Shown piece by piece: positions 31,113 to 61,618 of a DNA stretch of 64,000 nt. Under the pieces are notes generated by a model. It worked only from the letters and a program-made list of their open reading frames with translations. It had not been told where the DNA came from and did no database searches. A program made the position numbers and the translations under genes. The stretch lies in assembly GCF_006345805.1 (NCBI RefSeq), contig NC_043024.1:2356001-2420000 (forward strand). The letters run 5' to 3'. How positions within the stretch are numbered: the stretch's first letter is position 1; every line of letters starts with the position of its first letter. The stretch is from Octopus sinensis (taxonomy: Eukaryota).

Positions 31113-32936
31113 ATGGACGATGTTAATCCTTTGGGATCTTCAAACGATGTAAATTCCGTTTCACGGACAGTCAAAGGTGAGAAAGTTTTATTCAATGAAG
31201 AGTCCACTGATCAGAGATCGATACAGAGAAATATTACTGAATATAGCTGTGGCATTCGTAAGGAAAAATATATTTCAGAGCATGAATTAATCATACACAA
31301 GGACATCCATAAAAAGGAGAAACCATTCCAATGTGAAATATGCGGGAAATATTACACACAGAATGCCAGCCTTGTTGTCCACGTACGGGGTCACACGGGA
31401 GAAAGACCCTTCAAGTGTGATATCTGCGGGCAATATTTCGTTTCTACTACTATTTTGTCAAGGCATAGAACGATTCATACAGGTGAGAGGCGGTTTCGGT
31501 GTGAAATATGCGGCAAATCTTATATTAGTAATTCGAAACTTGTTATCCACGTACGGGGTCACACGGGAGAAAGACCCTTCAAGTGTGATATCTGCGGGAA
31601 ATATTTTGTGTCTAATACTGCTTTGTCAAAGCATAAAGCGATTCATACAGGTGAGAAACCATTTCAGTGTGAAATCTGCGGGAAATCTTTTCTTTATAAT
31701 TCGAAACTTGTTGTCCATATACGTAGTCATACGGGAGAGAAACCGTGGAGTTGTGATGTTTGCGGGAAGTGTTTCGTGTCCAGTAGTAGTTTGGCGATTC
31801 ACAAAAGGCTTCACACAGGAGAGAAATTGTTACGCTGTGAAATCTGCGGGAAAACTTTTCTAAATAATTCTAAACTTGTCATTCATGGACGTAGGCACAC
31901 GGGAGAGAAACCGTTTCGTTGTGAAATCTGCGGGAAGGATTTTGTTGAGAATTCTAAGCTTAAGAGCCATCAACGTAGGCACTCCGGAGAAAAACCGTAC
32001 GTGTGCGAAGTATGTGGAAAATCTTATGTAAATTACAGTGATTTAAAAACTCATGAAGGAATTCATAGTGGTGAAAAACCGTTCAGTTGTGAAATTTGCG
32101 GCAAGACTTTTCTCTGTAGCAGTAAATTGAAAACGCACGGTAGGATCCATACGGGAGAAAAACCGTTTCACTGTGACATATGTGGAAAATCGTTCTCTGA
32201 TAATTCTAATCTCGGAGTTCACAAACTTAGACACACGGGGGAATTACCACATCATTGTGAAATCTGTGGCAAGTCGTTTGTAAGTAACAGTGATTTAAAG
32301 GCCCATGAACGAATCCATACTGGAGAGAAACCGTTCCATTGTGATATCTGTGGGAGATCTTTCTCCCGGAATTTCTATCTTATGAGCCACAAGCGTAGAC
32401 ACACTGGGGCAAAACCTTGCACCTGTGATATCTGTGGGAAATTGTTCTATGTGAATTCAGAGCTTGTCGTTCATAAAATGATGCACGTTGGGGAAAATCC
32501 TTATTCTTGTGATATTTGTGGGAACTCTTTTCTGACTAATAGCTTGTTAAAAGACCACAAAAAAATTCACAGTGGGGAGAAACCTTATCACTGTGAGATC
32601 TGTGGGAAAGCTTTTCCTCAAAAACACGATTTAAAACGTCACAATCGAACTCATACGGGGGAGAATCCTTACCATTGTGATATGTGTGGGAAATCTTTCT
32701 CCCGGAATTTCAGTCTTATGAGCCACAAGCGTAGACACAGTGGGGAGAAACCTTGTGCCTGTGGGGTCTGTGGGAAATCTTTTGTTAATAACAGTGACTT
32801 AAACATGCACAAAAAGAAACACACGGGAGTAAAACTGTTTCAATGTGAAGTCTGTGGGTATTCTTTTATTTCTAGCCTTTTAAAGAGACATGGATGCATA
32901 CAGTCTGGTGGGAAGGCTTTAAAATGTGAAACCTGA
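31113..32936 (+). CDS. ZF7: C2H2 zinc-finger protein, 18 intact + 2 degenerate fingers
   Basis: 607-aa ORF. First finger has C>R (CGIR). Last finger is one residue short and has H>Q. Confidence 0.93.
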   Translation: MDDVNPLGSSNDVNSVSRTVKGEKVLFNEESTDQRSIQRNITEYSCGIRKEKYISEHELIIHKDIHKKEKPFQCEICGKYYTQNASLVVHVRGHTGERPFKCDICGQYFVSTTILSRHRTIHTGERRFRCEICGKSYISNSKLVIHVRGHTGERPFKCDICGKYFVSNTALSKHKAIHTGEKPFQCEICGKSFLYNSKLVVHIRSHTGEKPWSCDVCGKCFVSSSSLAIHKRLHTGEKLLRCEICGKTFLNNSKLVIHGRRHTGEKPFRCEICGKDFVENSKLKSHQRRHSGEKPYVCEVCGKSYVNYSDLKTHEGIHSGEKPFSCEICGKTFLCSSKLKTHGRIHTGEKPFHCDICGKSFSDNSNLGVHKLRHTGELPHHCEICGKSFVSNSDLKAHERIHTGEKPFHCDICGRSFSRNFYLMSHKRRHTGAKPCTCDICGKLFYVNSELVVHKMMHVGENPYSCDICGNSFLTNSLLKDHKKIHSGEKPYHCEICGKAFPQKHDLKRHNRTHTGENPYHCDMCGKSFSRNFSLMSHKRRHSGEKPCACGVCGKSFVNNSDLNMHKKKHTGVKLFQCEVCGYSFISSLLKRHGCIQSGGKALKCET

Positions 32937-33661: not shown

Positions 33662-35460
33662 ATGGACGATGTTAATCCTTGGGATCTTCAAACGATGTAA
33701 ATTCCGTTTCACGGACAGTCAAAGGTGAGAAAGTTTTATTCAATGAAGAGTCCACTGATCAGAGATCGATACAGAGAAATATTACTGAATATAGCTGTGG
33801 CATTCGTAAGGAAAAATATATTTCAGAGCATGAATTAATCATACACAAGGACATCCATAAAAAGGAGAAACCATTCCAATGTGAAATATGCGGGAAATAT
33901 TACACACAGAATGCCAGCCTTGTTGTCCACGTACGGGGTCACACGGGAGAAAGACCCTTCAAGTGTGATATATGCGGGAAATATTTCGTTTCTAATACTA
34001 TTTTGTCACGGCATAGAACGATTCATACAGGTGAGAGGCGGTTTCGGTGTGAAATATGCGGCAAATCTTATATTAGTAATTCGAAACTTGTTGTCCACGA
34101 ACGGGGTCACACGGGAGAAAAACCCTTCAAGTGTGATATCTGCGGGAAATATTTTGTGTCTAATACTGCTTTGTCAAAGCATAAAGTGATTCATACAGGT
34201 GAGAAACCATTTCAGTGTGAAATCTGCGGGAAATCTTTTCTTTATAATTCGAAACTTGTTGTCCATATTCGTAGTCATACGGGAGAGAAACCGTGGAGTT
34301 GTGATGTTTGCGGGAAGTGTTTCGTGTCCAGTAGTAGTTTGGCGATTCACAAAAGGCTTCACACGGGAGAGAAATTGTTACACTGTGAAATCTGTGGGAA
34401 AACTTTTATAAATAACTTGAAATTTGTCATTCATGAACGTAGGCACATCTGCGGGAAGGATTTTATCGAGAATTCTAAGCTTACGATCCACAAACGTACC
34501 CACACTGGGGAAAAACTATATTGTTGTGAGGTGTGTGGGAAATTTTTTGTTAATAGTAGTGTTTTAAAAACCCATGACCGAATCCATAGTGGGGAGAAGC
34601 CTTATCAGTGCGAATCGTGTGGCAAGTCTTTTCTCAGCAATAGTAATCTTCAAAGACACAAACGAATTCATACTGGGGAAAATCCATTCCACTGCGAAAT
34701 CTGTGGCAAGTCATTCTCTGATAATTCAAATTTTTTGGTTCACAAACGGAGACACATTGGGGAATTGTCTTATTGCTGTGAAATCTGTGGTAAATCGTTC
34801 GTAAATAACAGTGATTTAAAGACCCATGAACGAATCCACTCTGGAGAGAAACCCTTCCATTGTGATATCTGTGGGAAATCGTTCTATGTGAATTCACAGC
34901 TTGTAGTTCATAAAATGATGCATGCTGGGGAAAATCCCTTCTGCTGTGATATCTGTGGAAAGTCATTTCTTACGATCAGTTTATTAAAAACGCACAGAAA
35001 AATCCACTCTGGAGAGAAACCATATCACTGTGAGATCTGTGGGAAAGCTTTTCTTAAGAACCACGATTTAAAACGTCACAATCAAATCCACACAGGGGAG
35101 AAACCTTATCATTGTGATATTTGTGACAAGTCGTTTGGTAAAAATTCTTCCCTTGTTGTGCACAAGCAGATACACATGGGGGAAAAGTCCTATCTTTGTG
35201 ATATGTGTGGGAAATCCTTCTCCCGGAATTTCGATCTTATGAGCCACAAGCGTAGACACACTGGGGAAAAACCTTGTGCCTGTGGGGTCTGTGGGAAATC
35301 TTTTGTTAATAACAGTGACTTAAACATACACAAACGGAAACACACGGGTGAAAAACCCTATTGTTGTGAAGTATGTGAGAAATCCTTCATTTCTAGCAGT
35401 CTTTTAAAGAGACACGAACGACTGCACACCAGAGGGAAGCCTCTCAAATGTGAGACATAA
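33662..35460 (+). pseudogene. ZF8: C2H2 ZF gene with a 1-nt deletion shortly after the ATG (pseudogene or assembly indel), 18 intact fingers
   Basis: ATGGACGATGTTAATCC-TTGGG versus ZF7 ATGGACGATGTTAATCCTTTGGG. The ATG frame gives MDDVNPWDLQTM*. The long frame 33679..35460 opens only at TTG. Confidence 0.8.
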
Positions 35461-40507: not shown

Positions 40508-41461
40508 ATGGGAGACGTTGATCACTTGGATTCTTCTAATTACACGGTTATTAACGATGGAAGTCTAATTACACAGAGATATAACGGTGAGAAACCTTTT
40601 TGTGGCGAAATATTTACCGAAAAAATAAATATTGATGAATATCGTTGCGATGTTTGTGGTAAAACATTCGCATCAGATGAGGAATTGTTCGCACACACAG
40701 GTTTACACAAAGCAGGGAATATATATCACTGTGATATTTGCGGGAAACCTTTTATCTCTGAAAGCAATTTAGGGAGACACAAACGTAGACACACGGGAGA
40801 AAAATCGTTCCATTGCAAAATCTGCGGCAAATCTTTCTTCCAGAATTCCAACCTTGTTATCCACGTACGTAGCCATACAGGAGAGAAACCGTTTCACTGT
40901 GAAATATGCGATAAGTCGTTTGTTGCTAATGGTAACTTAACAGCACACAGGTTAATTCACACGGGAGAAAAGCCTTACCATTGCGAGGTGTGTGGTAAAT
41001 CTTTCAGTAATAATTCGAATCTTATTACCCACATTCGTAGCCACACCGGGGAAAAGCCTTACCACTGTAAAACGTGTGGGAAATTCTTTGTGTCTAACAG
41101 TGTCTTAACAAAGCATAGACGAATCCATACAGGAGAAAAACCCTATCGTTGCGAAGCTTGTGGAAAGTCATTTATCAAAAACGATGATTTAAGTAGACAC
41201 AAATTGATCCACACGGGAGTGAAACGGTTTCGTTGCGAAATCTGCGGTAAATCTTTCACTCAGAATTCTAGTCTTGTTATCCATATACGGAGGCACACTG
41301 GCGAACGACCCTATCGCTGTGAGATGTGTGAGAAATCGTTCGTCACTGGCGATTATTTGAACAGACACAAACGTATACATAGCAGAAGAAGTCTTTCGAT
41401 TGTGAAACGTGAGAAATTCTCTTGCAACCTAAAGTTACAGTCCCCCACACAACACACATAA
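40508..41461 (+). CDS. ZF9: C2H2 zinc-finger protein, 9 fingers, frameshifted C-terminal tail
   Basis: 317-aa ORF, N-terminus [11 protein letters not shown] identical to ZF4. Ancestral ..KSFDCET* survives in the -1 frame, ending at 41412. Confidence 0.92.
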
Positions 41462-44687: not shown

Positions 44688-44947
44688 GTAACCATGGCAA
44701 TCCTTTTTCTCTCCTTTAAATCTTTCAGTCAACGGACCGCGGCCATGCTGTAACAACATCTCCAAGTTGTTTACAGTATTGTTATGACAACAACACGTTT
44801 TCTGCTTTCATTAATTAGAGAGGGCAAGTCACGTGACGTGACACAGCTTTCACTTCCGGATTCTGTGACATTTGATCAACGTCGGATCTAATTCAAAAAT
44901 GTGATTTCGCAATAAATATCGATCTATTTCAACCACGACAGGTAAGA
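44688..44947 (+). promoter_or_regulatory. Putative promoter and non-coding first exon of the gap gene
   Basis: X-box-like GTAACCATGGCAAT 44688, GTCACGTGAC 44828, ACTTCCGG 44852, donor CAG|GTAAGA 44942. Confidence 0.5.
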
Positions 44948-46139
44948 TATGATACACATTGAACACCAATACAAAAGAAGCCGCTTATTACCATCGCAGA
45001 TCATCTCATCGACCGCTTACTGTAATCAATTTCAGCAGGTTTCCAAACTTATTCGTTTCACAGATGCTTTTTTTCCAAAACAGCCTCCAGTGTTTATAAT
45101 TAGAATTTAATTAAAAGTTGGGGATCTTTTCGCTTTGAACGGCAGATTTAAAAAATAATTTCCACATAACTAAACACTTTTAAACTTCGTATACTGGTAG
45201 AATGTGTTTATAAAACATCTTTTTCTCTTGGCTTTATTGAGAAAATTCTATAGTTTGTAAGATATTTGTTGTTTTTTTTTTCTTCAATTTCTGCAATTTC
45301 AACCAATCACTGGCGTCTATTGAGGTAAAAAAAAAAACATTCTGTGCCGTATGAATATATCGCTCGTTTAAAAAACAGATTGGGTTTATTTACATTTCTG
45401 AAGAAAAAAAAGATACCCTTTCCCCCACCCCTAACACTAAAACAGATTGAAATGCAATAGATCGATACTAGGATCATAATTATGGGTGACAATTTCATAT
45501 GTAAGATATTTGTTGTTTTTTTTTCCTTCAATTTCTGCAATTTCAACCAATCAATGACGTCTATTGAGGTAAAAAACAACATTCTGTGCCGTATGAATAT
45601 GTCGCTCGTTTAAGAAACAGATTGGGTTTATTTACATTTGTGAAGAAAAAAAAAGATACCCTTCCCCCACCCCTAACCCTAAAACAGATCGAAATGCAAT
45701 AGATCGATACTAGGGTGATAATTATGGGTTACAATTTCATATGACACCGCTAGAAAAAACTGCCGGTCAAACCGAAAAGATCCCAAAGTGGTATGTAATC
45801 ATGAATATGTGTATATTTTATGTCGCCAAATAATACCAAAGTAAACTTTATTGATCGGTCTTTTCCATACAATTCCTGGGAATTCATATTCAGCGGGGGT
45901 TTGAAGACCTTTGTTATAATCGGCTTTTCTGAGTATACACCTCTTTTTACTCTTTTACTTGTTTCAGTCATTTGACTGGCCATGCTGCAGCATCGCCTTT
46001 AGTCGAGCAAATCGACCCCGGGACTTATTCTTTGTAAGCCTAGTACTTATTTTATCGGTCTCTCTTTTGCCGAACCGCTAAGTTACGGGAACGTAAACAC
46101 ACCAGCATCAGTTGTCAAGCGATGTTGGGGGGACAAACA

Positions 46140-46380
46140 CACACACATGCCAGCCTCGTCTGGCACCTGTGTCGGTGGCACATAAAAAACACCATCCGAG
46201 CGTGGCCGTCTGCCAGCCTCGTCTGGCACCTGTGTCGGTGGCACATAAAAAACACCATCCGAGCGTGGCCGTCTGCCAGCCTCGTCTGGTACCTGTGTCG
46301 GTGGCACATAAAAAACACCATCCGAGCGTGGCCGTTCGCCAGCCTCGTCTGGCACCTGTGTTGGTGGCACATAAAATCAC
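46140..46380. repeat. 57-bp tandem repeat (~4 units) within an RTE 3'-UTR fragment
   Basis: GCCAGCCTCGTCTGGCACCTGTGTCGGTGGCACATAAAAAACACCATCCGAGCGTGG units. Confidence 0.85.
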
Positions 46381-47391
46381 CCACTACACTCTCGGAGTGG
46401 TTGGTGTTAGGAAGGGCATCCAGCTGTAGAAACACTGCCAGATCTGACTGGCCTGGTGCAGCCTTCGGGCTCCCGAGACCCCAGTTGAACCGTCCAACCC
46501 ATGCTAGCATGGAAAGCGGACGTTAAACGATGATGATGATATATATATACATATACATATATACGACGGGCTTCTTTCAGTTTCCGTCTACCAAATCCAC
46601 TCACAAGGCTTTGGTCGGCCCGAGGCTATAGTAGAAGACACTTGCCCAAGGTGCCAGCAAAAATGAGTTGTGCCTTCAATTGAAAGGGCCATCCTCATCA
46701 CACTGTATCTCTGTAGAAGTACGTTAAGGGTCCACTTGCTTGTTGATTTCACAAGCAGGCTGTCCCCTTCATCGGATCAACTCGAACACTCGTCTTCACA
46801 ACCGACAGAGAACCAGTTGTTATGAAAATGTTGAATCTTGACATTTTAAATATTTTCTGTGTCTTATACAAACTTCTCTACTTTTCAGAATCTCAGAAGA
46901 CATCCCTGTAAAAGAAATCACACCAGAAACATCATCAAGGGACATGCTCCATGGAAGAGATAATCCTGGATATATAAACCTGCAATAGATTTACTGAGAA
47001 ATGCTTTTTTCTGTATGAGATTATCAGTAACAATTCTCTACTCTGCTGTCTGGAATATGTTTCAGATGAATTTACATTCTAAGTAAACTCGGATGACAGA
47101 GTGGTCCGTGGCATCTTCGGAAATTGACGAAGATCACTGTTGATGTAAAGATGGCAATTTGTTATGAATGAAGTATTGGCGTTAGGAAGGGCATCCAGCT
47201 GTAGAAACACTGCCAGATCAGACTGGGCCTGGTGCAGCCTTCTGGCTTCCCAGACCCCAGTTGAACTGTCCAACCCATGCTAGCATGGAAAGCGGACGCT
47301 AAATGACGATGATGATGATGATGATGAAGTAATGAAACAAAATGAAGAAAAACATCCGTGTATTGTGGTGAGGGAAGAGAAAAAAAGAATT

Positions 47392-47424
47392 ATGGAAAAT
47401 AAATTACGTGAGAATAAATTGAAA
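47392..47424 (+). CDS. Start of a probable 11th ZF gene (subfamily B) truncated by the assembly gap
   Basis: ATGGAAAATAAATTACGTGAGAAT (MENKLREN) and its leader GAAAAACAT..TTGTGGTGAG..GAGAAAAA match the ZF10 start ATGGAAAATGAATTACGTGATAAT (MENELRDN). Ns begin at 47425. Confidence 0.7.
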
Positions 47425-47524
47425 NNNNNNNNNNNNNNNNNNNNNNNNNNNNNNNNNNNNNNNNNNNNNNNNNNNNNNNNNNNNNNNNNNNNNNNNNNNN
47501 NNNNNNNNNNNNNNNNNNNNNNNN
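47425..47524. other. Assembly gap (100 N, true size unknown)
   Basis: Run of N. Confidence 1.
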
Positions 47525-47579
47525 CAGAAGAAAGAGTACAGTAAGGATCGCCACACCCCCCCATGCGGAGCCTCGTGAG

Positions 47580-48960
47580 CTTTAGGTGTTTTCGCTCAAT
47601 AAACACACACAACGCCCGGTCTCGGGAATCGAAACCGCATTAAATATAATGTTAGATATAGTGAGTTATACGTAAAAATAGTATCATATGAATGAGAGAA
47701 CAACGTGATCACATTTATAACTGTTAAAGAAATGGATTGAACTGATATAGATACTGAATTACAAAAATAATTAAATCGATACATTATAAATAATATATTT
47801 CTGTGAGATATAACTCACTATCTACCATTATTTACCAACTAGCATTAAAGACCCTTCGTTGCCGGGTCGCATAGTGCTAGTGCATGTATAATATGTGTAC
47901 ATATTACATGTCCATCTATCTATATACATCTACACATAAATGCAAATATAAAGTTATATCTTGATATCGCTATGATATACTCAAAATATATACAGACTGG
48001 AATTGTTAGCTCTTTTTTTCTCTACAATTGTATACTTTATAGACAATAGTCTTTTCTTTAATTTAATTTGTATTACCATCTGGACTATTCATTCTGCACG
48101 CTAATTATATTTTTATTTATTCCCATTCATGTGAACCCACTTATTCAAGTTCAAATCATTGATGCTATTTTTACTTTGGTATGTTACGATTATTTATACT
48201 TTAGTTTGATTTTAATTATTACTTACTACATATTATTGAATTGTTATTATTATTTTTATTGTTAAAGTGAAAGCATCTGACATAAAATAGAGAAATATTT
48301 TTGTTTCACTTTTAAACATGTAATACTGAAATAGTGGAGAAGATATGATATTGCTATGGGCTCGCTCTAGGCAAGAAGTTGACATTTTTTTTTTGCCCAT
48401 GAAATACATGGACCCTAAGTAAGGCATGTGTAAAATTCTAATGAATTGGCTCTGTAGTTCACAAGTTTTAGGGAAACACACAGACAGACAGACACACATT
48501 CTCAGTTTTATATATATAAGATTTACCCCTATACAACCTGTTACCCAATGGTCAAGATTTATACCAATATAGTAATTAAAAAAAAGTTTTAGTCTGTTGA
48601 GATGTTTTGGAAGAATAACGTGAACCTAACGATATGTCTTTTCATTCCTCTGATGAATTTTGCCCATTAAATATTTTAATTATTGGAATTTCTTTTGAGC
48701 AAAATCGAAACAGCTGTAAGTGTACATGTTGAATTTTTGCAGTGAATAAACTATATTAATGCAACTTCTCTGTTTCCTGGATTTTAATTTGTATATATAT
48801 CATCATCATGATCATCGTTTAACGTCCGTTTTCCATGCTAGCACGGGTTGGACGGTTCGACCGGGGTCTGGGAAGCCAGGAGGCTGCACCAGGCCCAGTC
48901 TGATCTGGCAGTGTTTCTACAGCTGGATGCTCTTCCTAACGCCAACCACTCTGCGAGTTC
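47580..48960 (+). repeat. Segmental duplicate of 61922-63300 (3' flank of ZF10)
   Basis: Collinear unique and TE sequence. Homology resumes at 52250-52860 versus 63385-64000. Confidence 0.9.
47839..48521 (-). mobile_element. Non-autonomous Helitron (duplicate at 62175-62867)
   Basis: 5' TC..ATATATAAAACTGAGAATGTGTGTCTGTCTG and 3' GACCCGGCAACG..GGGTC hairpin followed by CTAG. Confidence 0.7.
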
Positions 48961-51900
48961 AGTGAGTGGTTTTTCCATGCACAGGAGCCAGACGGAGCTG
49001 GCAAACGGCCATGAACGGATGGTGCTTTTACGTGCCACCGGCACGGAGGTCAGGCGAGGCTGGCAACGGACACGAACAAATGGTGCTTTTACGTGCCACC
49101 GGCACGGAGGCCAGATGGGGCGGCACTGGCAACGGCCACGAATGGATGGTGCTTTTTACGTGCCACCGACACGGGGGCCAGGCGAGGCTGGCAACGGCCA
49201 CGAATGGATGGTGCTTCTTAGGTGTCACCGGCATGGAGGCCAGTCGGGGCGGCCACGATCGGATGGTTTGCTTACTTGTCACCAGCACTGGTATCACAGC
49301 CGCAATTTCCATTGATGTTGATCGACTTCGATTTTTGTTCTGCCTTCTGATATCTGATTTGATTCTGATTTTCACTTGCCTCAACGGGTCTTCACAAGTG
49401 GAGTTTTGTGTCCCAAGAAGGAAAGGTATGTATAAGTCAACTGGCTACATACCAGGTAGAGGCCACGGGTTATGGTCTCACTAGTCTTGCCGGGTCTTCT
49501 CACTCACAGCATACTTCCATAGGTCTCGGTCTCTAGTCATTTCCTTGGTGAGTCCTAAAGTGTGAAGGTCATGCTTCATCACCTCGTCCCAGGTTTTCCT
49601 GGGTCTACCTCTTCCACAGGTTCCCTCACCGCTAGGGTGTGGCACTTTTGCACACAAAACTATCTTCAGCCATTCTCATCACATGACCATACCAGCACAA
49701 ACGTCTCTCTTGCACACCACAACTGATGCTTCTTAGGTCCAACTTTTCTCTCAAGGTACTTACACTCTGTCAATTATGAACATTGACATTACACATCCAT
49801 CGGAGCATACTGGCTTCATTTGTTGCGAGCTTACGCATATCCTCAGCAGTCACGGCCCATGTTTCACTACCATGTAGCATCGCTGTACATACACATGCAT
49901 CATACAGTCTGCCTTTTGTCACAAGCAGGGGTAAGAGCTCTCTAAACTTTGCCCAGGCTATTCTTACTCTAGCAGTTACACTTTCAGCGCACCCACCCCC
50001 GCTACTGACTTGGTCACCTGGGTAGCGGAAGCTATCAACTACTTCTAGTTTGTCTCCCTGAAGCGTGGTAGAAGTTGGTCTCTGCACATTTCCAGTGTTT
50101 ATTGCTCCTGAGCATCTGCCACAGACAAAAACTATTTTCCTAGTTAGCCTTCCTTTGACATTGCTGCACCTCTTATGTGTCCATAGCTTACACTTGGTGC
50201 ACCTTATAGAGTTTCTACCTACACCTTTTCTACAGATCGAGCTGGGCCATCTACCTGAAGGCGTTTTGTGACTTTCCTACTTATTAGTACTTTGGTTTTA
50301 GCTAGGTTGACTCTAAGGCCCCTCGATTCTAAACCCTCCTTCCACACACCTGGAACTTCTCCTCCAGTTCTGATAGTGACTCAGCAATTAGAGCAAGTAC
50401 ATCAGCATAGAGGAGCTCCCAGGGGCATCCTGTCTTGAATCCTCCGTTATTGCCTGGAGGACTATGATAAATAGGGGGGGACTGAGGACTGAACCTTGGT
50501 GGACCCCAACCTCTACCCAGAATTCTTCACTGTACTCGTTGCCAACCCTTACCTTACTAGCAGCGTCTCTGTACATGGCTCGCACAGCTCTCACTAGCCA
50601 TTCATCTATCCTAGTTTCCTCATTGACCACCAGATAAGGGATCGGGGGACCCTGTCGAAGGCTTTCTCCATGTCAAAAAAGCCAGGTACAGGGGCTTATC
50701 TTTGGCTAGGTATTTCTCCTGCAGCTGTCTTACCAGGAATATAGCATCAGTAGTACTTTTCCCTGACACGAACCCAAACTGCATCTGATCTAAGCTAACT
50801 CTCTCTCTAATTAGTTGGGCTATAACCCTCTCCATAACCTTCATTACTGATCCAGCAGCTTGATACCCCTGTAGTTATTTGTATCTAGGGCTCACCTTTG
50901 CCTTTGTAGCAGTTGACTATTATGCTGCTACACCAGTCATGGGTATGACTCCTTCGTGTATCACCTTGTTAACCATACGGGTGACTAAGCATATTTCCAA
51001 CACTACAGATATTTTGAGCATCTCTGCAGTAATTCCTGATGGGCCTGGGGCTTTCCCTGTTTTCATGCTAGTAATTGCCTAACTACTAAGGAACTGTCAA
51101 CTCGGATTGCTGGTCCCTCTGTTGGGTCGACATTCGGCAGACACTCTTATCCCATTCATTTTTCTCATTCAGCAACCTTTCATATGGCGTCTCGTCTCCA
51201 AACCTCTCTCTTTGCATCCTCATTTAGCCCAAGTGAGCCGTCATCCTTGCGAACACATTTCTCTCCTACCACGTCACAATTCTCTCTCACACACTGTCTA
51301 GCAATAATACCTCAGTCTTTTTCATCCTCACGGCGGCAGAACATTGGCAATTTTTTCTTATCTGCTTCCCCTTGGCTATATACACCTGCCTCTTAGCGTT
51401 CCCTTCTGGCAGTCTGATACACTTCCCTGCTACCACCGTTCTTCCAGGCCTTCCAGCCTGTTTCTTTGTCTAATAGCCCTGTCAACAATATTGTTCCACC
51501 ACCACGTTATTTTGGGTCTTGAGGGGACTTTGCAACCAGCCACAGATCTGGTCAGTGGCTTTCAGCAGGTTGTCCCTCAGAAGCGTCCAGTTGTCTTCTA
51601 CCACATGTGTAGCTATGCCCCCTTCTATTTCGTCAAAGGCTTCAAGTAACATGTCTCTAAATCTCTGTCCATTCGCAGGGTCTTTAAACTTCCAGACCCT
51701 TCTCCATGTTGGTCGTCTTCTTGTCGTCCTCTTAGTCTGATCCTAAGTCACTGACTACCATTCTATGTTGTGGGTTCATTTTCGCCTGGGAAGGTTTTGG
51801 CATTTATAAGCAGCCATCTTTCCCATTTTCTGGCAAGGATGTAGTCGATTTGGCTAGTATGCCAGCCCGATCGGTAGGTGACCAGGTGGCTTGTCGGTTT

Positions 51901-52245
51901 CCTGAAGTTAGCGTTGCAAACCATAAGACTATTTGCATCGCAGAACTCCAGCAGCCTGATTCCCTCCTCGTTGCGGGAACCATAACCGTAGCCTCCATGT
52001 ACGCCATGGAAGCCCCCAGCATGTCGTCCAACATGCCCATTGAAGTCACCAGCCACAAGGAGAAGGTCCCTGTCATTCGTCAATGAGGTAGTCTGACGTA
52101 GGGTGTCATAGAAACTGTCTTTCTGTCCATCAGGTAGCCCTGGCTGAGGGGCATAGGCCGATATAATAGTTGTTAACCTATGATGGAGCACTAATCTAAT
52201 CTTAAGTATTCTGTCACATACTCTGACTACCTCGATTACCTTATC
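48801..52245 (-). mobile_element. 5'-truncated, frameshifted RTE-clade LINE
   Basis: AP-endonuclease motifs (SAYAPQ, GDFNGHVG, SQIDYIL) at 51763-52191. RT motifs (QFGF..STTDAI, GVHQGSVLSP) at 50388-50844. C-terminal block 49770-50087. Repeat-rich 3' UTR and (TGA)n tail at 48801. Confidence 0.92.
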
Positions 52246-52344
52246 TATATATAGTTAATCCAAACAAGAAAGCTCAAAAAAAACGCAACAATGCGAAGAC
52301 GTGGAACAAATATAGAATTATTGGACGCTCAGGAAAGAAGGAGG

Positions 52345-52379
52345 GTTTAACGTTTCGAGCGGAGCTCTTCGTCAGAAAC
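52345..52379 (-). ncRNA. Minimal (Penelope-type) type I hammerhead motif
   Basis: Minus strand reads GUUU CUGACGA A GAGC-UCC-GCUC GAA ACGU U AAAC: 4-bp stem I, palindromic ACGU stem III, GUU site. Confidence 0.65.
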
Positions 52380-52399
52380 ATAGAAGGAAAGATCTGCTG

Positions 52400-53040
52400 T
52401 ATATGAAATACCAGAAGTTATTGTGTTAAAAAGAGCAAGGACTAATGTTTACTTTGAAACTGCGGATGAATGTTCCTCGTGCCATTCAATGACAACTTTA
52501 GCTGTGTGAATTGGTGCATTATCATCCTGAAAGCTTGCGTTTCCCTCCAAAAACAGTTCCGCAACCATAGGGTGAATTTGATCAGATAAAATGCTTAAAT
52601 AGTCTTGACTATTAATTCTGCCATGAAGGAAAATCATTGGGCTGGCAGATTTCCAAGATATAGCTCCCCAGATCATTACAGATCCTCCTCCATGTTTAAC
52701 AGTTGGAAGAAGGCAGTCTGGGTCAAATGCTTCTTTTGGCTCTCTTCACACGTATATTCGGCCGGTGGTCGGAAATAAGGTAAAGGATGACTCGTCCTAG
52801 AAAATGACATTCTTCCACTGCTCTAGGGACCATTTCTATAGGTTTTTACTCCACTCTAAACCCTTTGCAACGTTTGTTTTTGAAAGTAATGGTTTTCTGA
52901 TTGCAGCCCTCCCTTGAAATCTGGCTTTGTGCAGCTCCCAGCGAAAAGTTTTTCTGGAAACTGGGTTCTTCAGGCGATGATGAAGCCCTGCAGTAATTTT
53001 GGGGACTGTACTTTTGTGATCCTTTCTAACAATTTGTTGA
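52400..53040 (-). mobile_element. Degenerate Tc1-family transposase fragment
   Basis: WKNVIF*DES, KHGGGSVMIWG and FQDDNAPIH motifs. Confidence 0.88.
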
Positions 53041-54564
53041 ATTAATTGTCATTTAAACCCGAAGCTATGTAAAAATATTGAGGACTTTTGTTGAAAGAAG
53101 AGTTACTTCCCCTCGTCCATTAACCGTTCAGTCTTTCAAATTCCGTTTATTTCCTGCTATAGTTTCATACAAATCTTTATTCCTTGATCAATTCCACTTT
53201 ATAACTGATGATTATTGGGAGACCGGAATTAGATACGAATGATTTCATATCTAACGCTCAACTCAGAAAAATAGAAGGACTAAAAAAATATTACCTAAAC
53301 AAAGTTATATAATTTCTTTCACTGTTTCGTTTTCCTTTTCACTGCCCATTCCAGTTTTTTTATTCCCCACGTTTTGCTATTAACCATTTCTTAATATCCT
53401 CACCATTTCCATCTATACCTATACAGACATTTTTATACATCGTGGATCCTCGTCGTTCGCCGTTGAGGATTCAGGTGTAAGACCAACTGAATCCCCTGCT
53501 CCGGAATTCCCGTGAGTCGCCGAGGATTCCGCTGGGATCATACAAGAACCTCTGCGACCCGAAGCTGACCTCTTTGGAATTCCTGGGTTCAGCACTTTCC
53601 CCTCTGTCCGATTTCATTCAGGTCAACTGGACACTGCAGAAAGTGTTATTTGCCCAAAGTGTCTCGCAGTAGGACAGAACGAGGGACCTCGTGGTTGTTA
53701 AGGAATCTTCTTGACCATTCGGCCGTACTCGGCCTACACACACACACACACGAAGCACCTGCTGAAGATGACGTGCAACTTCCAAAGAAAGTTTTAACAC
53801 TGGAAAACTTCAAGGTGCGTACGTCAAAGTTTATTTCTATAGCATATCTGTGCCTGTCTATCTATCGGTACTACTTGAGAAGAGTGGTCCTGGTGCGCGC
53901 ACTCGCGTACTCGTGCATCCGCGCTAGCTAGTCATGACTAGTCGATCCTTACTTTGTGTTTTTGTGTGTTATTTACTTAGTTTTAAAATTATTTACTTTG
54001 TATTTTTGTGTTTTATATAGTGGTTAGGGCAGCGGACTCGCGGTCATAGTATCGCGGTTTCGATTCCCAGACCGGGCGTTGTGAGTGTTTATTGAGCGAA
54101 AACACCTAAAAGCTCCACGAGGCTCCGGCAGGGGATGGTGGTGATCCCTGCTGTACTCTTTCACCACAACTTTCTCTCACTCTTACTTCCTGTTTCTGTT
54201 GTACCTGTATTTCAAAGGGCCGGCCTTGTCACTCTCTGTGTCACGCTAAATATCCCCGAGAACTACGTTAAGGGTACACGTGTCTGCGGAGTACTCAGCC
54301 ACTTACACGTTAATTTCACGAGCAGGCTGTTCCGTTGATTCGGATCAACCGGAACCTTCGTCGTCGTAACCGACGGAGTGCTTCCACTATCTGTCTGAAA
54401 AGGAAGTTGTTCCGCTTGAACGCACACAGAAACCTTCCAGCCTGGCCTTAGAAGATACAAAGAAGTAAAGACAACCCTTACTGCTATAAACATGGCCACC
54501 ACCACCAACATTCATGTTGGAAGCTTTAAAGCTGAAGAAAAGAATCGTCCTTTTCGAAGGAAGA

Positions 54565-54578
54565 ACTGCTTCTATCTA

Positions 54579-54637
<59 letters not shown>

Positions 54638-54820
54638 ATCTATCATCTATCTATCTATCTATCTATCTATCTAACTATCTATCTATCTTTCTATCTATCT
54701 ATCTATCTATCTATCTATTTGTGTCTATCTATCTATCTGTCTATCTATTTATCTAATTGCCTACCTACATACCTATCTATCTACCGACCTATCTATCTAC
54801 CTGTTTATCTAGCTATCTCT
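54565..54820. repeat. (TCTG)n(TC)n(TCTA)n microsatellite
   Basis: Read directly from sequence; another (TA)n at 57115-57194. Confidence 0.95.
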
Positions 54821-55418
54821 CTTTACCCTGTTACTTGTTTCAGTCATGTGACTGTGGCCATGCTGGAGCACCGCCTTTAGTCGATCAAATCGACCCCAGG
54901 ACTTATTCTTTAAACTTCGTATATTGGTAGAATGTGTTTATAAAACATCTTTTTCTCTTGGATTTCTTGAGAAAATTCTGTAGCTTGTAAGCTATTGGTT
55001 GTTTAATTTCTTGCATTTCAGCAATTTCAACCAATCAATGACGTCTATTGAGGTGAATAATTGTAGCTTACAAACTACAGAATTTTCTCAAGAAAGCCAA
55101 GAGAAAAATATGATTTATGTAACAAATTCTACCAGTATACGAAGTTTAAAAGTGTTTAGTTACCTAGAAATTATGTTAAAAACTGCTGCTCAAACCGAAA
55201 AGATAGGAGGGAACAGACAAGGACAGACAAAGGGATTAAGTTGATTACATCGACCCCAGTGCATAACTGGTACTTAAGTTTAAAAGTGTTTAGTTACAAA
55301 GAAATTATTTTAAAAATCTGCCAGTCAAAACGAAAAGATCCAGGGAATCGAACTCACTAACTCGCGATTGATAGCCCGATGCGCTAAACCACCGAGCCAT
55401 GCGCCTTCCGCTTAGACA

Positions 55419-55594
55419 GTAACCATGGTGATAGTCAACAACAATATTACGTTCCCCCTTCCTTCTTAGTTTCGCTTTTGTGTCAGCAGCACTCTTTGTG
55501 GTTTCATATATTAAAGAGTCTAAGTCACATGACGCACCTTACTTCCGGCTTGTCACGTTTCCTCAATTCTTTGGAGACGAAATCGAAAGTAAAT
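55419..55594 (+). promoter_or_regulatory. Putative promoter and non-coding first exon of ZF10
   Basis: GTAACCATGGTGAT 55419, GTCACATGAC 55524, ACTTCCGG 55541, donor AAA|GTAAAT 55589. Confidence 0.5.
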
Positions 55595-56002
55595 AAATTT
55601 TATTTATTTATTAAGCATCAGGGGTAAGTTATTATATATATATGTATATATATTGGAGAGGAATACGATCTGATTGAAGACGTTGTATAGCAAATACTGC
55701 GATTTATAGAAATGCGTAGTTTGTTGTGTATTGATGTAGGCTGGGCAGGAATGGAGTGGCGGTCAATCGGAATAGCGGATAACGTTATCAGCCGGTTATT
55801 GTTATCAAAATTAATTGGTTCAGACTTTATATTTGTTTAACGTCATATGTTAGGTGTTGGCCAATGCTGTATGGAAATGATCACAATAAGCGGCTTCCAC
55901 TATATATATGATTCTTGTGAAATTCCTTTGTAATCGCCAACTTTTTTGTGTGTGTATGTGCATATATATGTATATACATATATATGTCTATATATGTATA
56001 TA

Positions 56003-56448
56003 CTAGCAGTATCGCCCGGCGTTGCTTGGGTATGTTTCGACCCGCTGGAATTGTAATTTTGAAAAGTAAAAATTTTGTGAACATTTTTCTGGTCGAAATA
56101 CACCGAAAAGTGGCGACACAGCAGTGAAAAAATCGTAAAAAATAGGGATTTTCATAGAAAAAAGCATCTTTTTGATGTAAATAATTTATGGTGTTAACAT
56201 GGTCCGATTTGAATTTTATGTTCTAATGTAAACCACATTAAGAAAAGCATTTGACATACACACCAGAATGTGAGTTTTCTGTAAATTTTGCTTAATTGGA
56301 GTTTAAATTTTAAAAACTGGACCTGGCATGACCCGATGCATTCTACTCTTAAAAATGCTAGGTAAATTGTAATTGAAGAAATCCTATATTGTAGATTTCT
56401 ATAAGTTACAAAGGGAGGCAGATAAAATCTGCCTTTTATAATAAGAGA
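56003..56448 (-). mobile_element. Non-autonomous Helitron
   Basis: Minus strand begins A^TC and ends with a hairpin (CCCAAGCAACGCCGGG) followed by CTAG^T. Confidence 0.75.
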
Positions 56449-57119
56449 TGTGTGCGGGCATGAGAATGCACATATATATATAGACGTTTTTACTTAGTAT
56501 TTTTCCATTATTTTGTGGGGGTGGGGGACATATATATATTCATTTTTTGTATATGCGTGTGTATGTATGCGTATATAAATATGTGCGGGTATGTACATAT
56601 ATGGGCGTGTGTGTGTGTATGAGTGCATAGGGGCATGTCCGTATATGAACGTGGTTTTTATGCTTTGTATACTTCCTTATGTTTTTTTTTCTGTTACCTT
56701 TAAACATGGTTTTTCTTGTGTTTGTGCGTATATAGACGTATGTATGAACTTTTACGGTACGCATGTGTGTGTGTGTATGAGGTTGTATATATATGCGTAT
56801 ATATTTGGCGAAAAATGCGAGTGAAGATGTGTATGTTTCCATAGTGACGTATAAGTACGCACGTGGGTTTTGGGGCGCAGAATTATAATACAGTAATTTC
56901 CCTTTATATAACGGTATTTTTTCATAGCGTTTTTTCAGATGGCCCGATAACCGAAGAGATGGTGTTGTGGATTTCCACTTCGGCATCTGAAACTCAGAGT
57001 TTTATCTTGACTATTGAGTAAATGTAACATATTATTTTATAGATAAATTTCCTCTATTTACATAATATTGAGGTCTCTTTCTTTCTTTCTTTTGTTATCT
57101 TACCGTTTTACCAATATAT

Positions 57120-57169
<50 letters not shown>

Positions 57170-58532
57170 ATATATATATATATATACATATATAAAGGTG
57201 GCGAGCTGGCAGCAACATTAACACGACGGGCGAAATGCATGTGTCTTTACGTTATGAGTTCAAATTCCACTGAGGTCGACTTTGCCTTTCATCTTTCAGG
57301 GTCGATACATTAAGTACCAGTTATGCACTGGGGTCGATGTAATCGACTTAATCCCTATGTCTGTCCTTCTTTGTCCCCTCTTTGTATATCCCCTTGTGGG
57401 CAATAAATATATATATATATATCATCATCATCATCATCATCAACCGTTTCCAAGTAAACATTAGTCCTTGCTTTTTTTAACACTATAACTTCTGGTATTT
57501 CATATATAACAGATGTAAGTGGAGGCGCAATGGCCCAGTGGTTAGGGCAGCGGACTCGCGGGTTCGATTCCCGGATAGGGCGTTGTGAGTGTTTATTGAG
57601 CAAAAACACCTGAAGCTCCACGATGCTCCAGCAGAGGGTGGTGGCAACCCCTGTTGTACTCTTTCGCCCCAACTTTCTCTCACTCTTTCTTCCTGTTTCT
57701 TGTCCCCCGACTTCCTACGCAACCGCCGAGCCTGGATGCGCATTCATCCATCCGTCGATGCTTTCGGTGTCGGGGGATGACCTGCTTTCTCCTCTGCAGG
57801 TCTTACGAATAGCAAAGGACCACGTTTCCGACTTCTTCCATCTTGCGAGCTCTGGGACGAAGACCGCTTCGCTCAACAAACAAACAGCAGATGTAAATTA
57901 TACATTCTTCGTTGGTTCAAAACTTTTTGGGAATTTTTAGAAAACTCTTGCAAATTTGTAATTCATAGGATTGTGCAAAAACCAAAACAAAATTTTTTAA
58001 ATTGCTGTGTGATTTAAGAGCTATTTAGCTATTAGTTTTAGCACATCCCATGACTACCTTATAATCTCCTTGTTTGTTTGTCAGACTGACGTGTTAACGT
58101 TTATTTGGCCAGCTAAAGGTTTATATCTCCAGTTTATCAGTATAAAAACGTAATAAAATTTTCATTATTTAATCTTTACTTTTCAAGTATATTCTATATC
58201 TTATATTATTTCTTTTTTATTTCAGAGTTTCAGAGAGGATATTTAGTATAAAAGAAGATTTTACATCGAACACATTATGAATATATATGATATGTTCTTT
58301 AAGTTGAAACTAAGATGCTACACAGAAGGAATATAACCCTGTTTATATAAATCGATTATAGAATTGTAAAAGATTTTCTTTGGGTGTGTGATTATTAGCA
58401 GCATTTCTGTACTTCACTGCCTGGAATGGGTGCAAGAAAACCAATCCTGTATTCTAATTAAACCTGGATTGCAAAGGAATTGGCAGCCCCCTCAGACATT
58501 GACAATGATTACAGTTGATGGAAATATATATT

Positions 58533-58912
58533 TCTTTATTGCCCACTAGGGGGCTAAACATAGAGGGGACAAACAAGGACAGACAAAGGGATTAAGTTGA
58601 TTATATCTACCCCACAGTGAAACAGGTACTTTATTTATTGACCCCGAAAGGATGAAAGACAAAGTTGACCTCGGCGGAATTTGAACTCAGAACGTAACGA
58701 CAGACGAAATACCTATTTCTATTTCTTTACTACCCACAAGGGACTAAACATAGAGGGGACAAATAAGGACAGACAAAGGGATTAAGTCGATTATATCTAC
58801 CCTAGTGTGAAACTGGTACTTTATTTATTGACCCAGAGAGGATGAAAGGCAAAGTCGACCTCGGTGGAATTTGAACTCAGAACAAAAAGACAGACGAAAT
58901 ACCGCTAAGCAT
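58533..58912 (-). mobile_element. SINE family A, 2 units upstream of the ZF10 ATG
   Basis: Same units. Other copies at ~6838-7022, 18362-18500, 42880-43040 and 57195-57405. Confidence 0.75.
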
Positions 58913-59004
58913 TTCAAGCAACAGAAATAACTGGGGAATAGAATATAAAAAAAGAAGAAAAAAAAAGAAAAACATTTTGACTTTGTGGTGAGAGGAGAAA
59001 AATA

Positions 59005-61128
59005 ATGGAAAATGAATTACGTGATAATGAGGTTAATTGTAATACACAGTCGTTAAGGATTGATTTTACTGAAGATGAAACAGAAGAAGAAGAGAAAACA
59101 TCATTTCACTGTGATGTCTGCAACAAGTCCTTCTTTCTCAAAGATGAACAGACGATTCACAAATGTTTCCATGCAGGAGAGGATCTCTATCGCTGTGAAA
59201 TCTGTGGTAAATCATTCTCTGAAAAGGTTCGTTTGACCACACATAAACACATTCACGCAGGTGTCGAGCCGTATCGCTGTAATACCTGTGGTAAATCATT
59301 CTCTCAGAATCATAGCTTAGCTATTCACAAATGCATCCACATTGTGGTTAAGTCACATCATTGCGATATCTGTGGTAAATCATTCTCTGGAAATAGCGAC
59401 CTAACCACTCACAAACGTATTCATACAGGAGAGAAACCATATCAGTGTGATATCTGTGGTAAATCATTCTCTAAAAGTAGTCAGTTAATTAAACACAAAC
59501 ATATTCATACAGGAGAGAAACCATATCAGTGTGATATCTGTGGTAAATCATTCTCTGGAAATAGCGACCTAACCACTCACAAACGTATTCACACAGGAGA
59601 GAAACAATATCAGTGTGATATCTGTGGTAAATCATTCTCTAAAAGTAGTCAGTTAATTAAACACAAACGTATTCATACAGGAGAGAAGCCATATCAGTGT
59701 GGTATCTGTGGTAAATCATTCTCTCGAAATCACCACTTAACTACTCACAAATACATTCATACAGGAGAGAAACCTTATCAGTGTGATATCTGTGGTAAAT
59801 CATTCTCTAGAAATAGCGACCTAACCACTCACAAACGTATTCATACAGGAGAGAAACCATATCATTGTGATATCTGTGGTAAATCATTCTCTCATAATCA
59901 CCACTTAACTACTCACAAATACATTCACACAGGAGAGAAACCTTATCAATGTGATATCTGTGGTAAATCATTCTCTGGAAATAGCGACCTAACCACTCAC
60001 AAACGTATTCATACAGGAGAGAAACCATATCAGTGTGATATCTGTGGTAAATCATTCTCTAGAAATAGCGACCTAACCACTCACAAACGTATTCATACAG
60101 GAGAGAAACCATATCACTGTGATATCTGTGGTAAATCATTCTCTAGAAATGACCACTTAACTAAACACAAATACATTCACACGGGAGAGAAACCTTATCA
60201 CTGTGATATCTGTGGTAAATCATTCACTCGAAATCACAACTTAATTACTCACAAATACATTCACACAGGAGAGAAACCTTATCAGTGTGATATCTGTGGA
60301 GAATCATTCTCTCATAATCAGCACTTAACTACTCACAAATACATTCACACAGGAGAGAAACCTTATCAGTGTGATATCTGTGGTAAATCATTCTCTCAGA
60401 ATCACCACTTAACTACTCACAAATACATTCACACAGGAGAGAAACCATATCATTGTGATATCTGTGGTAAATCATTCTCTAAAAGTTGTCAGTTAATTAA
60501 ACACAAACGTATTCATACAGGAGAGAAACCATATCATTGTGATATCTGTGGTAAATCATTCTCTCAGATATACCACTTAACTACTCACAAATACATTCAT
60601 ACAGGAGAGAAACCATATCATTGTGATATCTGTGGTAAATCATTCTCTCAAAATCACAGCTTAACTACTCACAAATACATTCACACAGGAGAGAAACCTT
60701 ATCAGTGTGATATCTGTGGAGAATCATTCTCTCATAATCAGCACTTAACTACTCACAAATTCATTCACACAGGAGAGAAACCTTATCACTGTGATATCTG
60801 TGGTAAATCATTCTCTCGAAATCACAACTTAACCACTCACAAATACATTCACACAGGAGAGAAACCTTATCACTGTGATATCTGTGGTAAATCATTCTCT
60901 CAGAATCAAAACCTAACTAAACACAAATACATTCACACAGGAGAGAAACCATATCATTGTGATATATGTGGTAAATCATTCTCTCAGAATCACCACTTAA
61001 CTAAACACAAATACATTCACACAGGAGAGACGCCATATCATTGTGATATCTGTGGTAAATCGTTTTCACAGAGCGATGCCTTAACTAACCATAAATGTAT
61101 TCATACAGGAGAAAAACCATATCACTGA
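59005..61128 (+). CDS. ZF10: C2H2 zinc-finger protein, 24 fingers, homogenised 84-bp repeat array (subfamily B)
   Basis: 707-aa ORF. Fingers 4-24 have a near-identical backbone CATACAGGAGAGAAACCATATCAxTGTGATATCTGTGGTAAATCATTCTCT. Confidence 0.95.
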
Positions 61129-61618
61129 TATTTCTGGTAAATCATTCTCACAAAATCAACATTTAACTAAACACAAACCCTTCCATACTGGAGAGAAACC
61201 ATACTACTGTGATACCTGTGGAAAGTCATTCGCTGGTGACTTAAATCCTCATAAACACATTCATAGTAAAGAGAAGCCATATCACTGTGATATCTGTGGT
61301 AAATCATTCTCTTTAAATCATCACTTAGCTAAACACAAACTTATTCATACAGGAGGGAGGCCATATCACTGCAATATCTGTGGAAAGTCTTTTTCAAAGA
61401 GCGATGTCTTAATCAAACACAAACGTTTTCACACAGGAGAGAAGCCATACGTGTGTGATATCTGTGGTAAATCCTTCTCTCAGAACCATACCTTAATTTC
61501 TCACAAACACATTCACACGGAAGAGAAGCCTTATCACTGTGATGTATGTGAAAAGTCTTTCTCTCAAAAACGTAACTTAACTACTCACAAACATATCCAC
61601 GCAGGAAAGAAACCATAA
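61127..61618 (+). pseudogene. Out-of-frame continuation of the ZF10 array (2 broken + 4 intact fingers)
   Basis: A 2-nt deletion (CAC TGT GAT > CAC TGA T) creates the stop. The +1 frame stays open for 163 codons to TAA at 61616-61618. Confidence 0.85.

What the first reader, a model, noticed from the sequence alone, without database searches (positions are those of the whole stretch)
46880..47530. An unannotated 11th ZF gene is probably hidden in the 100-N gap
Seen in sequence: the 44.7-47.4 kb block mirrors 55.4-59.0 kb. Both have the same promoter motif order and a homologous acceptor-flanked exon (TTTTCAG|AATC at ~46887 versus TTTCAG|AGTT at ~58225, sharing ..ATAAxCCTG..TATATAAA..GATTAT..CTGGAAT). 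Both have a homologous leader and start (MENKLREN versus MENELRDN). Sequence after the gap matches the 3' flank of ZF10. Inference: a second homogenised 84-bp finger array failed to assemble, so automated annotation would miss the gene.
Basis: partly seen in the sequence, partly recalled or inferred. Interest (0 to 1): 0.7.

Follow-up and report, generated by a model that had tools for sequence, protein, structure and literature searches.

The report
Zinc-finger gene probably lost in assembly gap
A gap in an octopus genome assembly sits between the start of a zinc-finger gene and the tail region of one, so at least one ordinary member of a large, already known gene family is probably missing from the assembly and its annotation.

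Summary
The window is Octopus sinensis ASM634580v1, CM016886.1:2356001-2420000. Left of the 100-N gap, four collinear blocks match the upstream region of ZF10 at 66-76% identity: promoter/exon 1, exon-2 acceptor, exon-2 body, and leader plus ATG. An ATG at 47392 opens 11 complete codons (MENKLRENKLK) that end on the last base before the gap. Right of the gap is a SINE fragment, then 1.4 kb that is 90-93% identical to the 3' flank of ZF10 and its relatives. The sequence then continues collinearly into the spacer that precedes ZF10. No finger-coding sequence lies on either side. Mapped on six gap-free relatives found elsewhere on the chromosome, 1.9-3.4 kb is missing. No gene is called there in the public record.

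Two corrections. First, the flanks have different histories. The 5' side is about 30% diverged from the family and the 3' side about 5.5%. So this is either a mosaic gene or more than one gene is hidden. Second, six sibling arrays assembled without gaps, and the ZF10 array has only 80% matches between repeats. Repeat homogeneity alone therefore does not explain the gap.

No reads, transcripts or second assembly could be reached, so the hidden gene remains an inference. It is a likely new member of a known kind, of low general interest.

The parts
44782..44879 (+). Promoter / first non-coding exon block of the gap-side gene. It includes the composite motif TCACGTGAC...ACTTCCGG at 44829-44859. 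A GT donor candidate lies at 44942-44943.
   Evidence: 70% identical to ZF10 55478-55566, z=10. It also matches the promoters of family copies in L002. The composite motif occurs only here and at 55525. The donor was read from the sequence and is not tested.
46831..46897 (+). Acceptor region of the putative second (5'UTR) exon, with the AG at 46888-46889.
   Evidence: 73.5% identical over 68 nt to 58168-58234, which holds the ZF10 acceptor AG at 58224-58225. Splicing itself is not tested.
46944..47152 (+). Body of the putative 5'UTR exon 2.
   Evidence: 66% identical to 58315-58527, z=15. It also hits the same block in L002 and L003 copies.
47176..47320 (.). SINE-type repeat inserted between the exon-2 block and the leader.
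   Evidence: More than 12 copies in the window at 80-96% identity.
47331..47391 (+). Leader immediately upstream of the start codon. An in-frame upstream ATG lies at 47332.
   Evidence: 73-76% identical to the leaders of ZF10 and of five copies in L002 and L003.
47392..47424 (+). Start of the coding sequence: ATG plus 10 codons, MENKLRENKLK, ending on the last base before the gap.
   Evidence: It shares 6 of 11 residues with [11 protein letters not shown] of ZF10.
47425..47524 (.). Assembly gap of 100 N. By the AGP/NCBI convention (my own knowledge) 100 N stands for unknown length. It is the expected place of the finger-array exon.
   Evidence: Mapped on relatives, the missing interval is about 1.9-3.4 kb.
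47525..47638 (-). Fragment of a SINE in reverse orientation. It is the first sequence of the right-hand contig.
   Evidence: Matches 24392-24500, 54054-54162 and 57558-57665 at 82-88%. The same element sits at L002 about 12890-13118, downstream of the stop codon of an intact relative.
47579..48980 (+). 3' flank of a ZF10-family unit.
   Evidence: 90.4% identical to 61921-63327. 47529-48798 is 93% identical to L002 13009-14295. It is the most diverged of the six 3' flanks compared.
52242..55400 (+). Inter-unit spacer joining the unit at the gap to ZF10. It lies after a SINE/LINE insertion at 48981-52241.
   Evidence: 91-93% identical and collinear with the spacers between tandem units in L002 and L003. 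A LINE endonuclease domain was found at 51766-52191, minus strand.
55478..61628 (+). ZF10, the assembled relative used as a yardstick. Promoter block 55478-55566, ORF 59005-61128, 84-bp finger array 59194-61628.
   Evidence: Pfam zf-C2H2 and zf-H2C2_2 matches. 24 fingers in the ORF. Six more fingers follow in another frame after 61126.

Best explanation
The gap interrupts a gene unit of a young, tandemly amplified C2H2 zinc-finger family of Octopus sinensis. The left contig ends 33 bases into the coding exon of a ZF10-like gene. The right contig begins a few hundred bases downstream of where a ZF10-family coding exon would stop. It then runs through the family's usual 3' flank and spacer into ZF10. 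At least one single-exon finger array is therefore missing from the assembly and from the annotation. By comparison with six relatives it would be about 1.9-3.4 kb with 5-30 fingers.

The simplest reading is one gene spanning the gap. That gene would be a mosaic of an old, diverged 5' part (promoter, 5'UTR exons, first codons) and a family-typical 3' part. Unequal crossing-over or gene conversion inside finger arrays at the edge of a tandem array would produce such a gene. If intact, its product would be a poly-zinc-finger DNA-binding protein like its relatives.

Shown: the homology and order of both flanks, the absence of finger sequence, the absence of a called gene, and the discordant divergence of the two flanks. 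Inferred: that the flanks are truly adjacent, that exactly one array lies between them, that the ORF is intact, and that it is expressed.
For: - The source record was identified and the window is identical to it.
- Four collinear 5' blocks and the start codon are homologous to ZF10 and to five further copies.
- The promoter composite motif is unique to the two loci in the window.
- The reading frame is open up to the last base before the gap.
- The right contig is collinear with the 3' flank, spacer and next promoter of the tandem units in L002 and L003.
- Both contig ends lie within about 0.1-0.7 kb of where the array would begin and end in intact relatives.
- There is no finger-coding motif between 41126 and 59422 on either strand.
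- Relatives carry ORFs of 183-903 aa with 5-30 fingers and are C2H2 proteins by Pfam.
- No gene is called at 41.5-51.5 kb.
Against: - No read, transcript or second assembly was reachable, and nothing in the protein collection contains MENKLRENKLK.
- The 5' side is about 30% diverged from the family and the 3' side about 5.5%, so a single gene needs an extra recombination event.
- Six sibling arrays assembled without gaps, so the cause of the break is unexplained.
- 100 N says nothing about true size. According to PMC10700109 Table 1, about 14% of this assembly's bases lie outside the chromosome-scale scaffolds, so intervening contigs could exist.
- Family members are often damaged: a 183-aa copy in L003 and a frame break in ZF10.
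Confidence: 0.6

Rival explanations
1. More than one gene is hidden. The left contig ends at the array of an old ZF10-like paralogue. The right contig starts after the array of a separate, young ZF10-family unit. The gap would then hide the first gene's array and 3' flank, a spacer, and the second unit's promoter, 5' exons and array, roughly 10 kb or more. Some of this may sit in an unplaced contig.
For: - The two flanks diverge very differently from the family, about 30% against about 5.5%.
- Family units occur as tandem arrays with 7.5-12.5 kb periods in L002 and L003.
- Units are 92-98% identical, which favours collapse or breaks in long-read assembly.
- About 14% of the assembly's bases are unplaced.
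Against: - It needs two assembly breaks and a lost intervening contig.
- The right contig resolved more than 7 kb of sequence that is 91-93% identical to other units, so unique spacer sequence should have assembled.
- One mosaic gene explains the same data with one break.
Confidence: 0.22
2. Scaffolding misjoin. The two contigs are not neighbours in the real chromosome. Each ended at a family array, and Hi-C scaffolding placed them side by side.
For: - 100-N gaps in this kind of assembly are joins of unknown size (AGP/NCBI convention, my own knowledge).
- Family copies lie at three or more places within 450 kb of the same chromosome, so several similar contig ends may exist.
- The flank histories are discordant.
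Against: - Order and orientation are exactly those of one gene unit: 5' end, then 3' flank, then spacer, then the next gene, all on the + strand.
- Even under this reading each contig end still implies an unassembled array.
Confidence: 0.1
3. Dead relic. The array was deleted, or the gene was truncated by rearrangement. The gap is short and hides no finger gene.
For: - Family members decay: a 183-aa copy and the ZF10 frame break.
- L002 copy 0 lacks the usual 3' flank.
- There are many upstream ATGs and a SINE in the putative 5'UTR.
Against: - A short unique junction would have been assembled, not left as a gap.
- The promoter motif, splice-site blocks and start codon are still recognisable despite about 30% divergence, while the sequence between them is not alignable.
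- The frame is open to the contig end.
Confidence: 0.08

Closest known systems
ZF10-type family of Octopus sinensis. Members are the ORF at window 59005..61128 and copies at CM016886.1 2.14-2.17 Mb and 2.59-2.61 Mb. NCBI models XP_036370343.1, XP_036370344.1 and XP_029652355.1 are named 'zinc finger protein 32/248/430-like'.
   Same: - Same order of promoter motif, exon-1 block, exon-2 acceptor and body, leader and ATG.
- The start reads MEN-LR-N.
- Same 3' flank, SINE fragment and spacer.
- Tandem neighbour of ZF10.
   Different: - The 5' side is only 68-76% identical, whereas family members are 87-98% identical to each other.
- Residues 4, 7 and 9-11 differ.
- The finger array itself is unseen.
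Lineage-specific C2H2 zinc-finger expansions of coleoid cephalopods (PMC12513265; Albertin et al. 2015, Nature 524:220, cited from my own knowledge).
   Same: - Clustered, recently duplicated poly-finger genes.
- Coding part in one exon with 84-bp finger units.
- Embedded in SINE-rich DNA.
   Different: Nothing unusual was seen. This would be one more member, hidden by an assembly gap.
Hybrid genes made by unequal crossing-over between tandem paralogues (for example haemoglobin Lepore, or red/green opsin hybrids; established genetics, from my own knowledge).
   Same: The old 5' part joined to a young 3' part in a tandem array is the pattern such exchange gives.
   Different: The junction is not visible here, so this is only an inference. 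Two separate genes in the gap fit the data as well.

Membership tests
C2H2 (Krueppel-type) poly-zinc-finger gene (Pfam PF00096 / PF13465) | Tandem C-X2-C-X12-H-X3-H fingers joined by TGEKP-like linkers | not testable with these tools
   For the gap gene, any fingers would lie in the 100 N, and none is present on either side. The yardstick genes meet the feature: ZF10 has 24 fingers and L002 copy A has 26. Their Pfam E-values are 1e-123 to 1e-207.
C2H2 (Krueppel-type) poly-zinc-finger gene (Pfam PF00096 / PF13465) | An open reading frame running from the start codon through the array to a stop | not testable with these tools
   The frame is open for 11 codons up to the gap. The sequence after the gap is a SINE with stops in all frames.
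ZF10-type family of O. sinensis | Family 5' architecture in order: promoter motif, exon-1 block, exon-2 acceptor and body, leader, ATG | tested here: met
   Four collinear blocks at 66-76% identity with z = 10-15. The motif pair is unique to the two loci. The blocks also hit L002 and L003 copies.
ZF10-type family of O. sinensis | 5' region and N-terminus near-identical to other members (87-98% DNA identity; [12 protein letters not shown]...) | tested here: not met
   The leader is 68-72% identical to all six copies. Six of 11 residues are shared. On its 5' side this is a sister lineage, not a recent copy.
ZF10-type family of O. sinensis | Family 3' flank and inter-unit spacer | tested here: met
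   93-95% identical to five other 3' flanks, against 96-98% among those. The spacer at 52242-55400 is collinear with L002 and L003.
Unannotated gene | No gene model at the locus in the public record | tested here: met
   The genes called for CM016886.1 over window 30508-51461 are only 31113-35460 and 40508-41461. No protein shares words with MENKLRENKLK.
Expressed gene | Transcripts or peptides starting MENKLRENKLK; use of the proposed splice sites | not testable with these tools
   No octopus transcript or read data could be reached. The collections hold only NCBI models for this genome.

The most novel reading that the evidence does not exclude
The gap hides a single intact mosaic gene. An old ZF10-like promoter, 5'UTR and N-terminus would be fused, by unequal exchange inside finger arrays, to the array and 3' flank of the young, concertedly evolving ZF10 family. 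That would make this the diverged edge unit of a tandem array. It would be a clean natural example of how octopus zinc-finger clusters put new finger arrays under old regulatory regions.
Probability: 0.35. Interest if true: 0.3.

Novelty: new member of a known kind. Interest (0 to 1): 0.2.

Why it matters
The main value is for genome curation. One member, possibly more, of the octopus C2H2 zinc-finger expansion is missing from the O. sinensis reference, and counts of this family from that assembly are underestimates. The assembled relatives are also poorly modelled. NCBI products are 80-164 aa where the genomic ORFs are 623-903 aa. The contrast between an old 5' side and a young 3' side is a small, testable hint that unequal exchange within finger arrays reshuffles these genes. 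It does not bear on any open question beyond that.

Tried and rejected
1. Looking for a second assembly across the gap. An exact-protein look-up of the neighbouring 317-aa ZF ORF with 10-kb flanks returned only the window's own record.\n2. Looking for a protein with the hidden N-terminus. A profile of the ZF10 N-terminus plus MENKLRENKLK, run at E<=10, found a single cluster of truncated ZF10-family models and nothing with the 11-mer.\n3. Looking up the 707-aa ZF10 ORF. It is not on record, so the annotation around ZF10 could not be listed.\n4. Cluster look-ups showed only O. sinensis NCBI entries and no O. vulgaris or O. bimaculoides relatives of this N-terminus. The orthologue route was dropped.\n5. 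A tRNA scan of 44-64 kb, run to label the SINE to the right of the gap, found nothing.\n6. I ran no further search on the full-length ZF10 protein. It would return generic C2H2 proteins and could not reveal the gap's content.\n7. Rejected: that the left block is just the common cluster promoter. The other ZF genes in the window lack the motif pair and start differently.\n8. Rejected: that the flanks are continuous. The homologous coordinates jump by 2.8-3.0 kb.

Full report
**Source.** An exact-protein look-up of the neighbouring ORF 40508..41461 placed the window in Octopus sinensis assembly ASM634580v1 (GCA_006345805.1), chromosome record CM016886.1. The returned locus is base-for-base identical to window 30508-51461 and includes the gap, so the window is CM016886.1:2356001-2420000. 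In that stretch the record has only two called genes, at window 31113-35460 and 40508-41461. Nothing is called between 41.5 and 51.5 kb.

**The gap and continuity.** The window has one gap, 47425-47524, exactly 100 N. By the AGP/NCBI convention (my own knowledge) 100 N stands for unknown length. An ATG at 47392 is followed by ten codons, giving MENKLRENKLK, and the eleventh codon ends on 47424, the last base before the gap. After the gap, 47525-47638 is a reverse-oriented SINE fragment with other copies at 24392-24500, 54054-54162 and 57558-57665. It has stops in all three forward frames. The two sides are therefore not continuous. No finger-coding linker motif occurs between 41126 and 59422 on either strand.

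**Left flank.** Sensitive alignment finds four collinear, same-strand blocks shared with the region upstream of ZF10:
- 44782-44879 matches 55478-55566 (70%, z=10 against shuffles).
- 46831-46897 matches 58168-58234 (73.5%). This block spans both candidate acceptors.
- 46944-47152 matches 58315-58527 (66%, z=15).
- 47334-47415 matches 58957-59028 (76%, z=12).

The composite TCACRTGAC-N(3-25)-ACTTCCGG occurs only at 44829 and 55525, against 0.01 expected. The other zinc-finger genes of the window start MEDV, MENVDNLD or MGDVDHLD, so the resemblance is specific to ZF10. Most of the remaining 2.7 kb is repeat sequence, including a SINE at 47176-47320 between the exon-2 block and the leader.

**Right flank.** 47579-48980 is 90.4% identical over 1445 nt to 61921-63327. 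That interval starts about 0.3 kb after the true end of the ZF10 array. The ZF10 ORF stops at 61126-61128, but six more fingers follow in another frame up to a TAA at 61616-61618.

**Family context.** A profile of the ZF10 N-terminus plus the 11-mer found one cluster of three O. sinensis NCBI proteins of 80-164 aa. Their loci gave two further pieces of the same chromosome: L002 (2143817-2174762, reversed) and L003 (2586062-2610108, reversed). Each carries tandem ZF10-type units.
- Family ATGs open ORFs of 707 aa (ZF10), 779 and 623 aa (L002), and 903, 183 and 654 aa (L003), with 5-30 fingers.
- Neither locus has a gap.
- ZF10 and L002 copy A are C2H2 proteins by Pfam.
- The ZF10 array is 29 units of 84 bp with 80% matches.

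In L002 copy A the order is: ATG at 10001, array ending near 12330, a 440-bp SINE, a short 3' region, the reverse SINE at about 12890-13118, then the 3' flank. The right contig matches this from 13009 onward at 93%. Mapped on that copy, the missing interval is 10034-13008, about 3.0 kb. On the other copies it is about 1.9-3.4 kb. Beyond the 3' flank, window 52242-55400 is collinear at 91-93% with the spacers between tandem units in L002 and L003. It is interrupted at 48981-52241 by SINE and LINE insertions. The right contig therefore begins with the tail of a family unit that is the tandem neighbour of ZF10.

**Discordance.** Among family copies the leaders are 87-98% identical, but the gap-side leader is 68-72% identical to every one of them. 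The 3' flanks are 96-98% identical among family copies, and the gap-side flank is 93-95% identical to them. The 5' side is thus about 30% diverged and the 3' side about 5.5%. The locus is not a simple duplicate of ZF10.

**Interpretation.** The position of both contig ends, within 0.1-0.7 kb of where an array would begin and end, together with the correct order and strand, makes at least one unassembled finger-array exon very likely. This holds whether one or two genes are missing, and even if the join is wrong.
- One mosaic gene is the simplest reading. An old 5' part would have been joined to a young array and flank by unequal exchange or conversion at the edge of a tandem array. I give it about 0.4-0.45, inside a confidence of 0.6 for 'an unassembled ZF10-like coding exon belongs at this gap'.
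- Two genes with a lost intervening contig are the main rival. According to Table 1 of PMC10700109, 13,516 scaffolds, 20,491 contigs and only 86% of bases are in chromosome-scale scaffolds for this assembly, which leaves room for that.
- A misjoin and a finger-less relic are less likely.

Six sibling arrays were assembled, and the ZF10 units are only 80% alike. Haplotype differences or unit-level repeats (units 92-98% identical) are equally possible causes. This is inference.

**What is known.** Clustered, lineage-specific C2H2 expansions are a described hallmark of cephalopod genomes, with expression highest in neural tissues (PMC12513265; Albertin et al. 2015 from my own knowledge). The hidden gene, if real, is one more member. 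O. vulgaris, about 2.5 million years diverged and largely collinear with O. sinensis, has a more contiguous assembly (PMC10700109) and is the obvious place to read the locus. It could not be reached with these tools.

**Limits.** No reads, transcripts or second assembly were available. The absence of MENKLRENKLK from the protein collection is weak evidence, because the collection seems to contain only NCBI models for this genome. The splice sites and the promoter are inferred from homology and sequence only.

**Verdict.** This is a likely new member of a known kind. Interest is low (0.2), mainly for curation of the assembly.

Noticed in passing
window 61100-61620: The ZF10 ORF stops at 61126-61128 inside a finger ('ccatatcactgatatttctgg' where relatives read 'ccatatcactgtgatatctgtgg'). 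Six further fingers continue in another frame to a TAA at 61616-61618. This is either a real frame break or a long-read indel error.
   Followed up: partly
L002 10001-20946 and 21516-30946; L003 10001-14047: NCBI models of this family are short spliced products (XP_036370343.1 91 aa, XP_036370344.1 80 aa, XP_029652355.1 164 aa, and a 273-aa product). The genomic single-exon ORFs at the same ATGs are 779, 623 and 183 aa. The 707-aa ZF10 ORF is not on record at all. The family looks systematically mis-modelled.
   Followed up: partly
L002 (CM016886.1:2143817-2174762) and L003 (CM016886.1:2586062-2610108): ZF10-type units form tandem arrays with a 7.5-12.5 kb period at two other sites of the same chromosome. 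They lie about 200 kb on either side of the window, on the opposite strand, and their promoters are 97-98% identical to that of ZF10.
   Followed up: partly
window 48981-52241: SINE sequence plus a LINE-like element lie on the minus strand, inserted in the spacer between the gap unit and ZF10. The ORF 51766-52191 hits Pfam Exo_endo_phos_2. An 86.6% copy sits at L002 17071-19336.
   Followed up: partly
window 47303-47391: A (GAT)n microsatellite is followed by an in-frame upstream ATG at 47332 with no stop before 47392. It would add MKQNEEKHPCIVVREEKKRI to the N-terminus. The putative 5'UTR also holds more than 20 upstream ATGs.
   Followed up: no
window 46148-46376 and 48980-49290: A 63-bp unit is repeated about 3.6 times at 96-97% identity inside a SINE-like element. 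A related, inverted, more diverged array lies just past the right-flank homology.
   Followed up: no
window 45256-45743: A head-to-tail duplication of about 244 bp (45256-45501 and 45500-45743, 93.5% identical) lies inside a repeat that has other copies at 4.5, 8.7, 10.8, 13 and 14.3 kb.
   Followed up: no
window 31113-35460: The record calls one gene with a 608-aa product across two near-duplicate ZF ORFs, 31113..32936 (607 aa) and 33679..35460 (593 aa). This may be a merged or mis-modelled pair.
   Followed up: no
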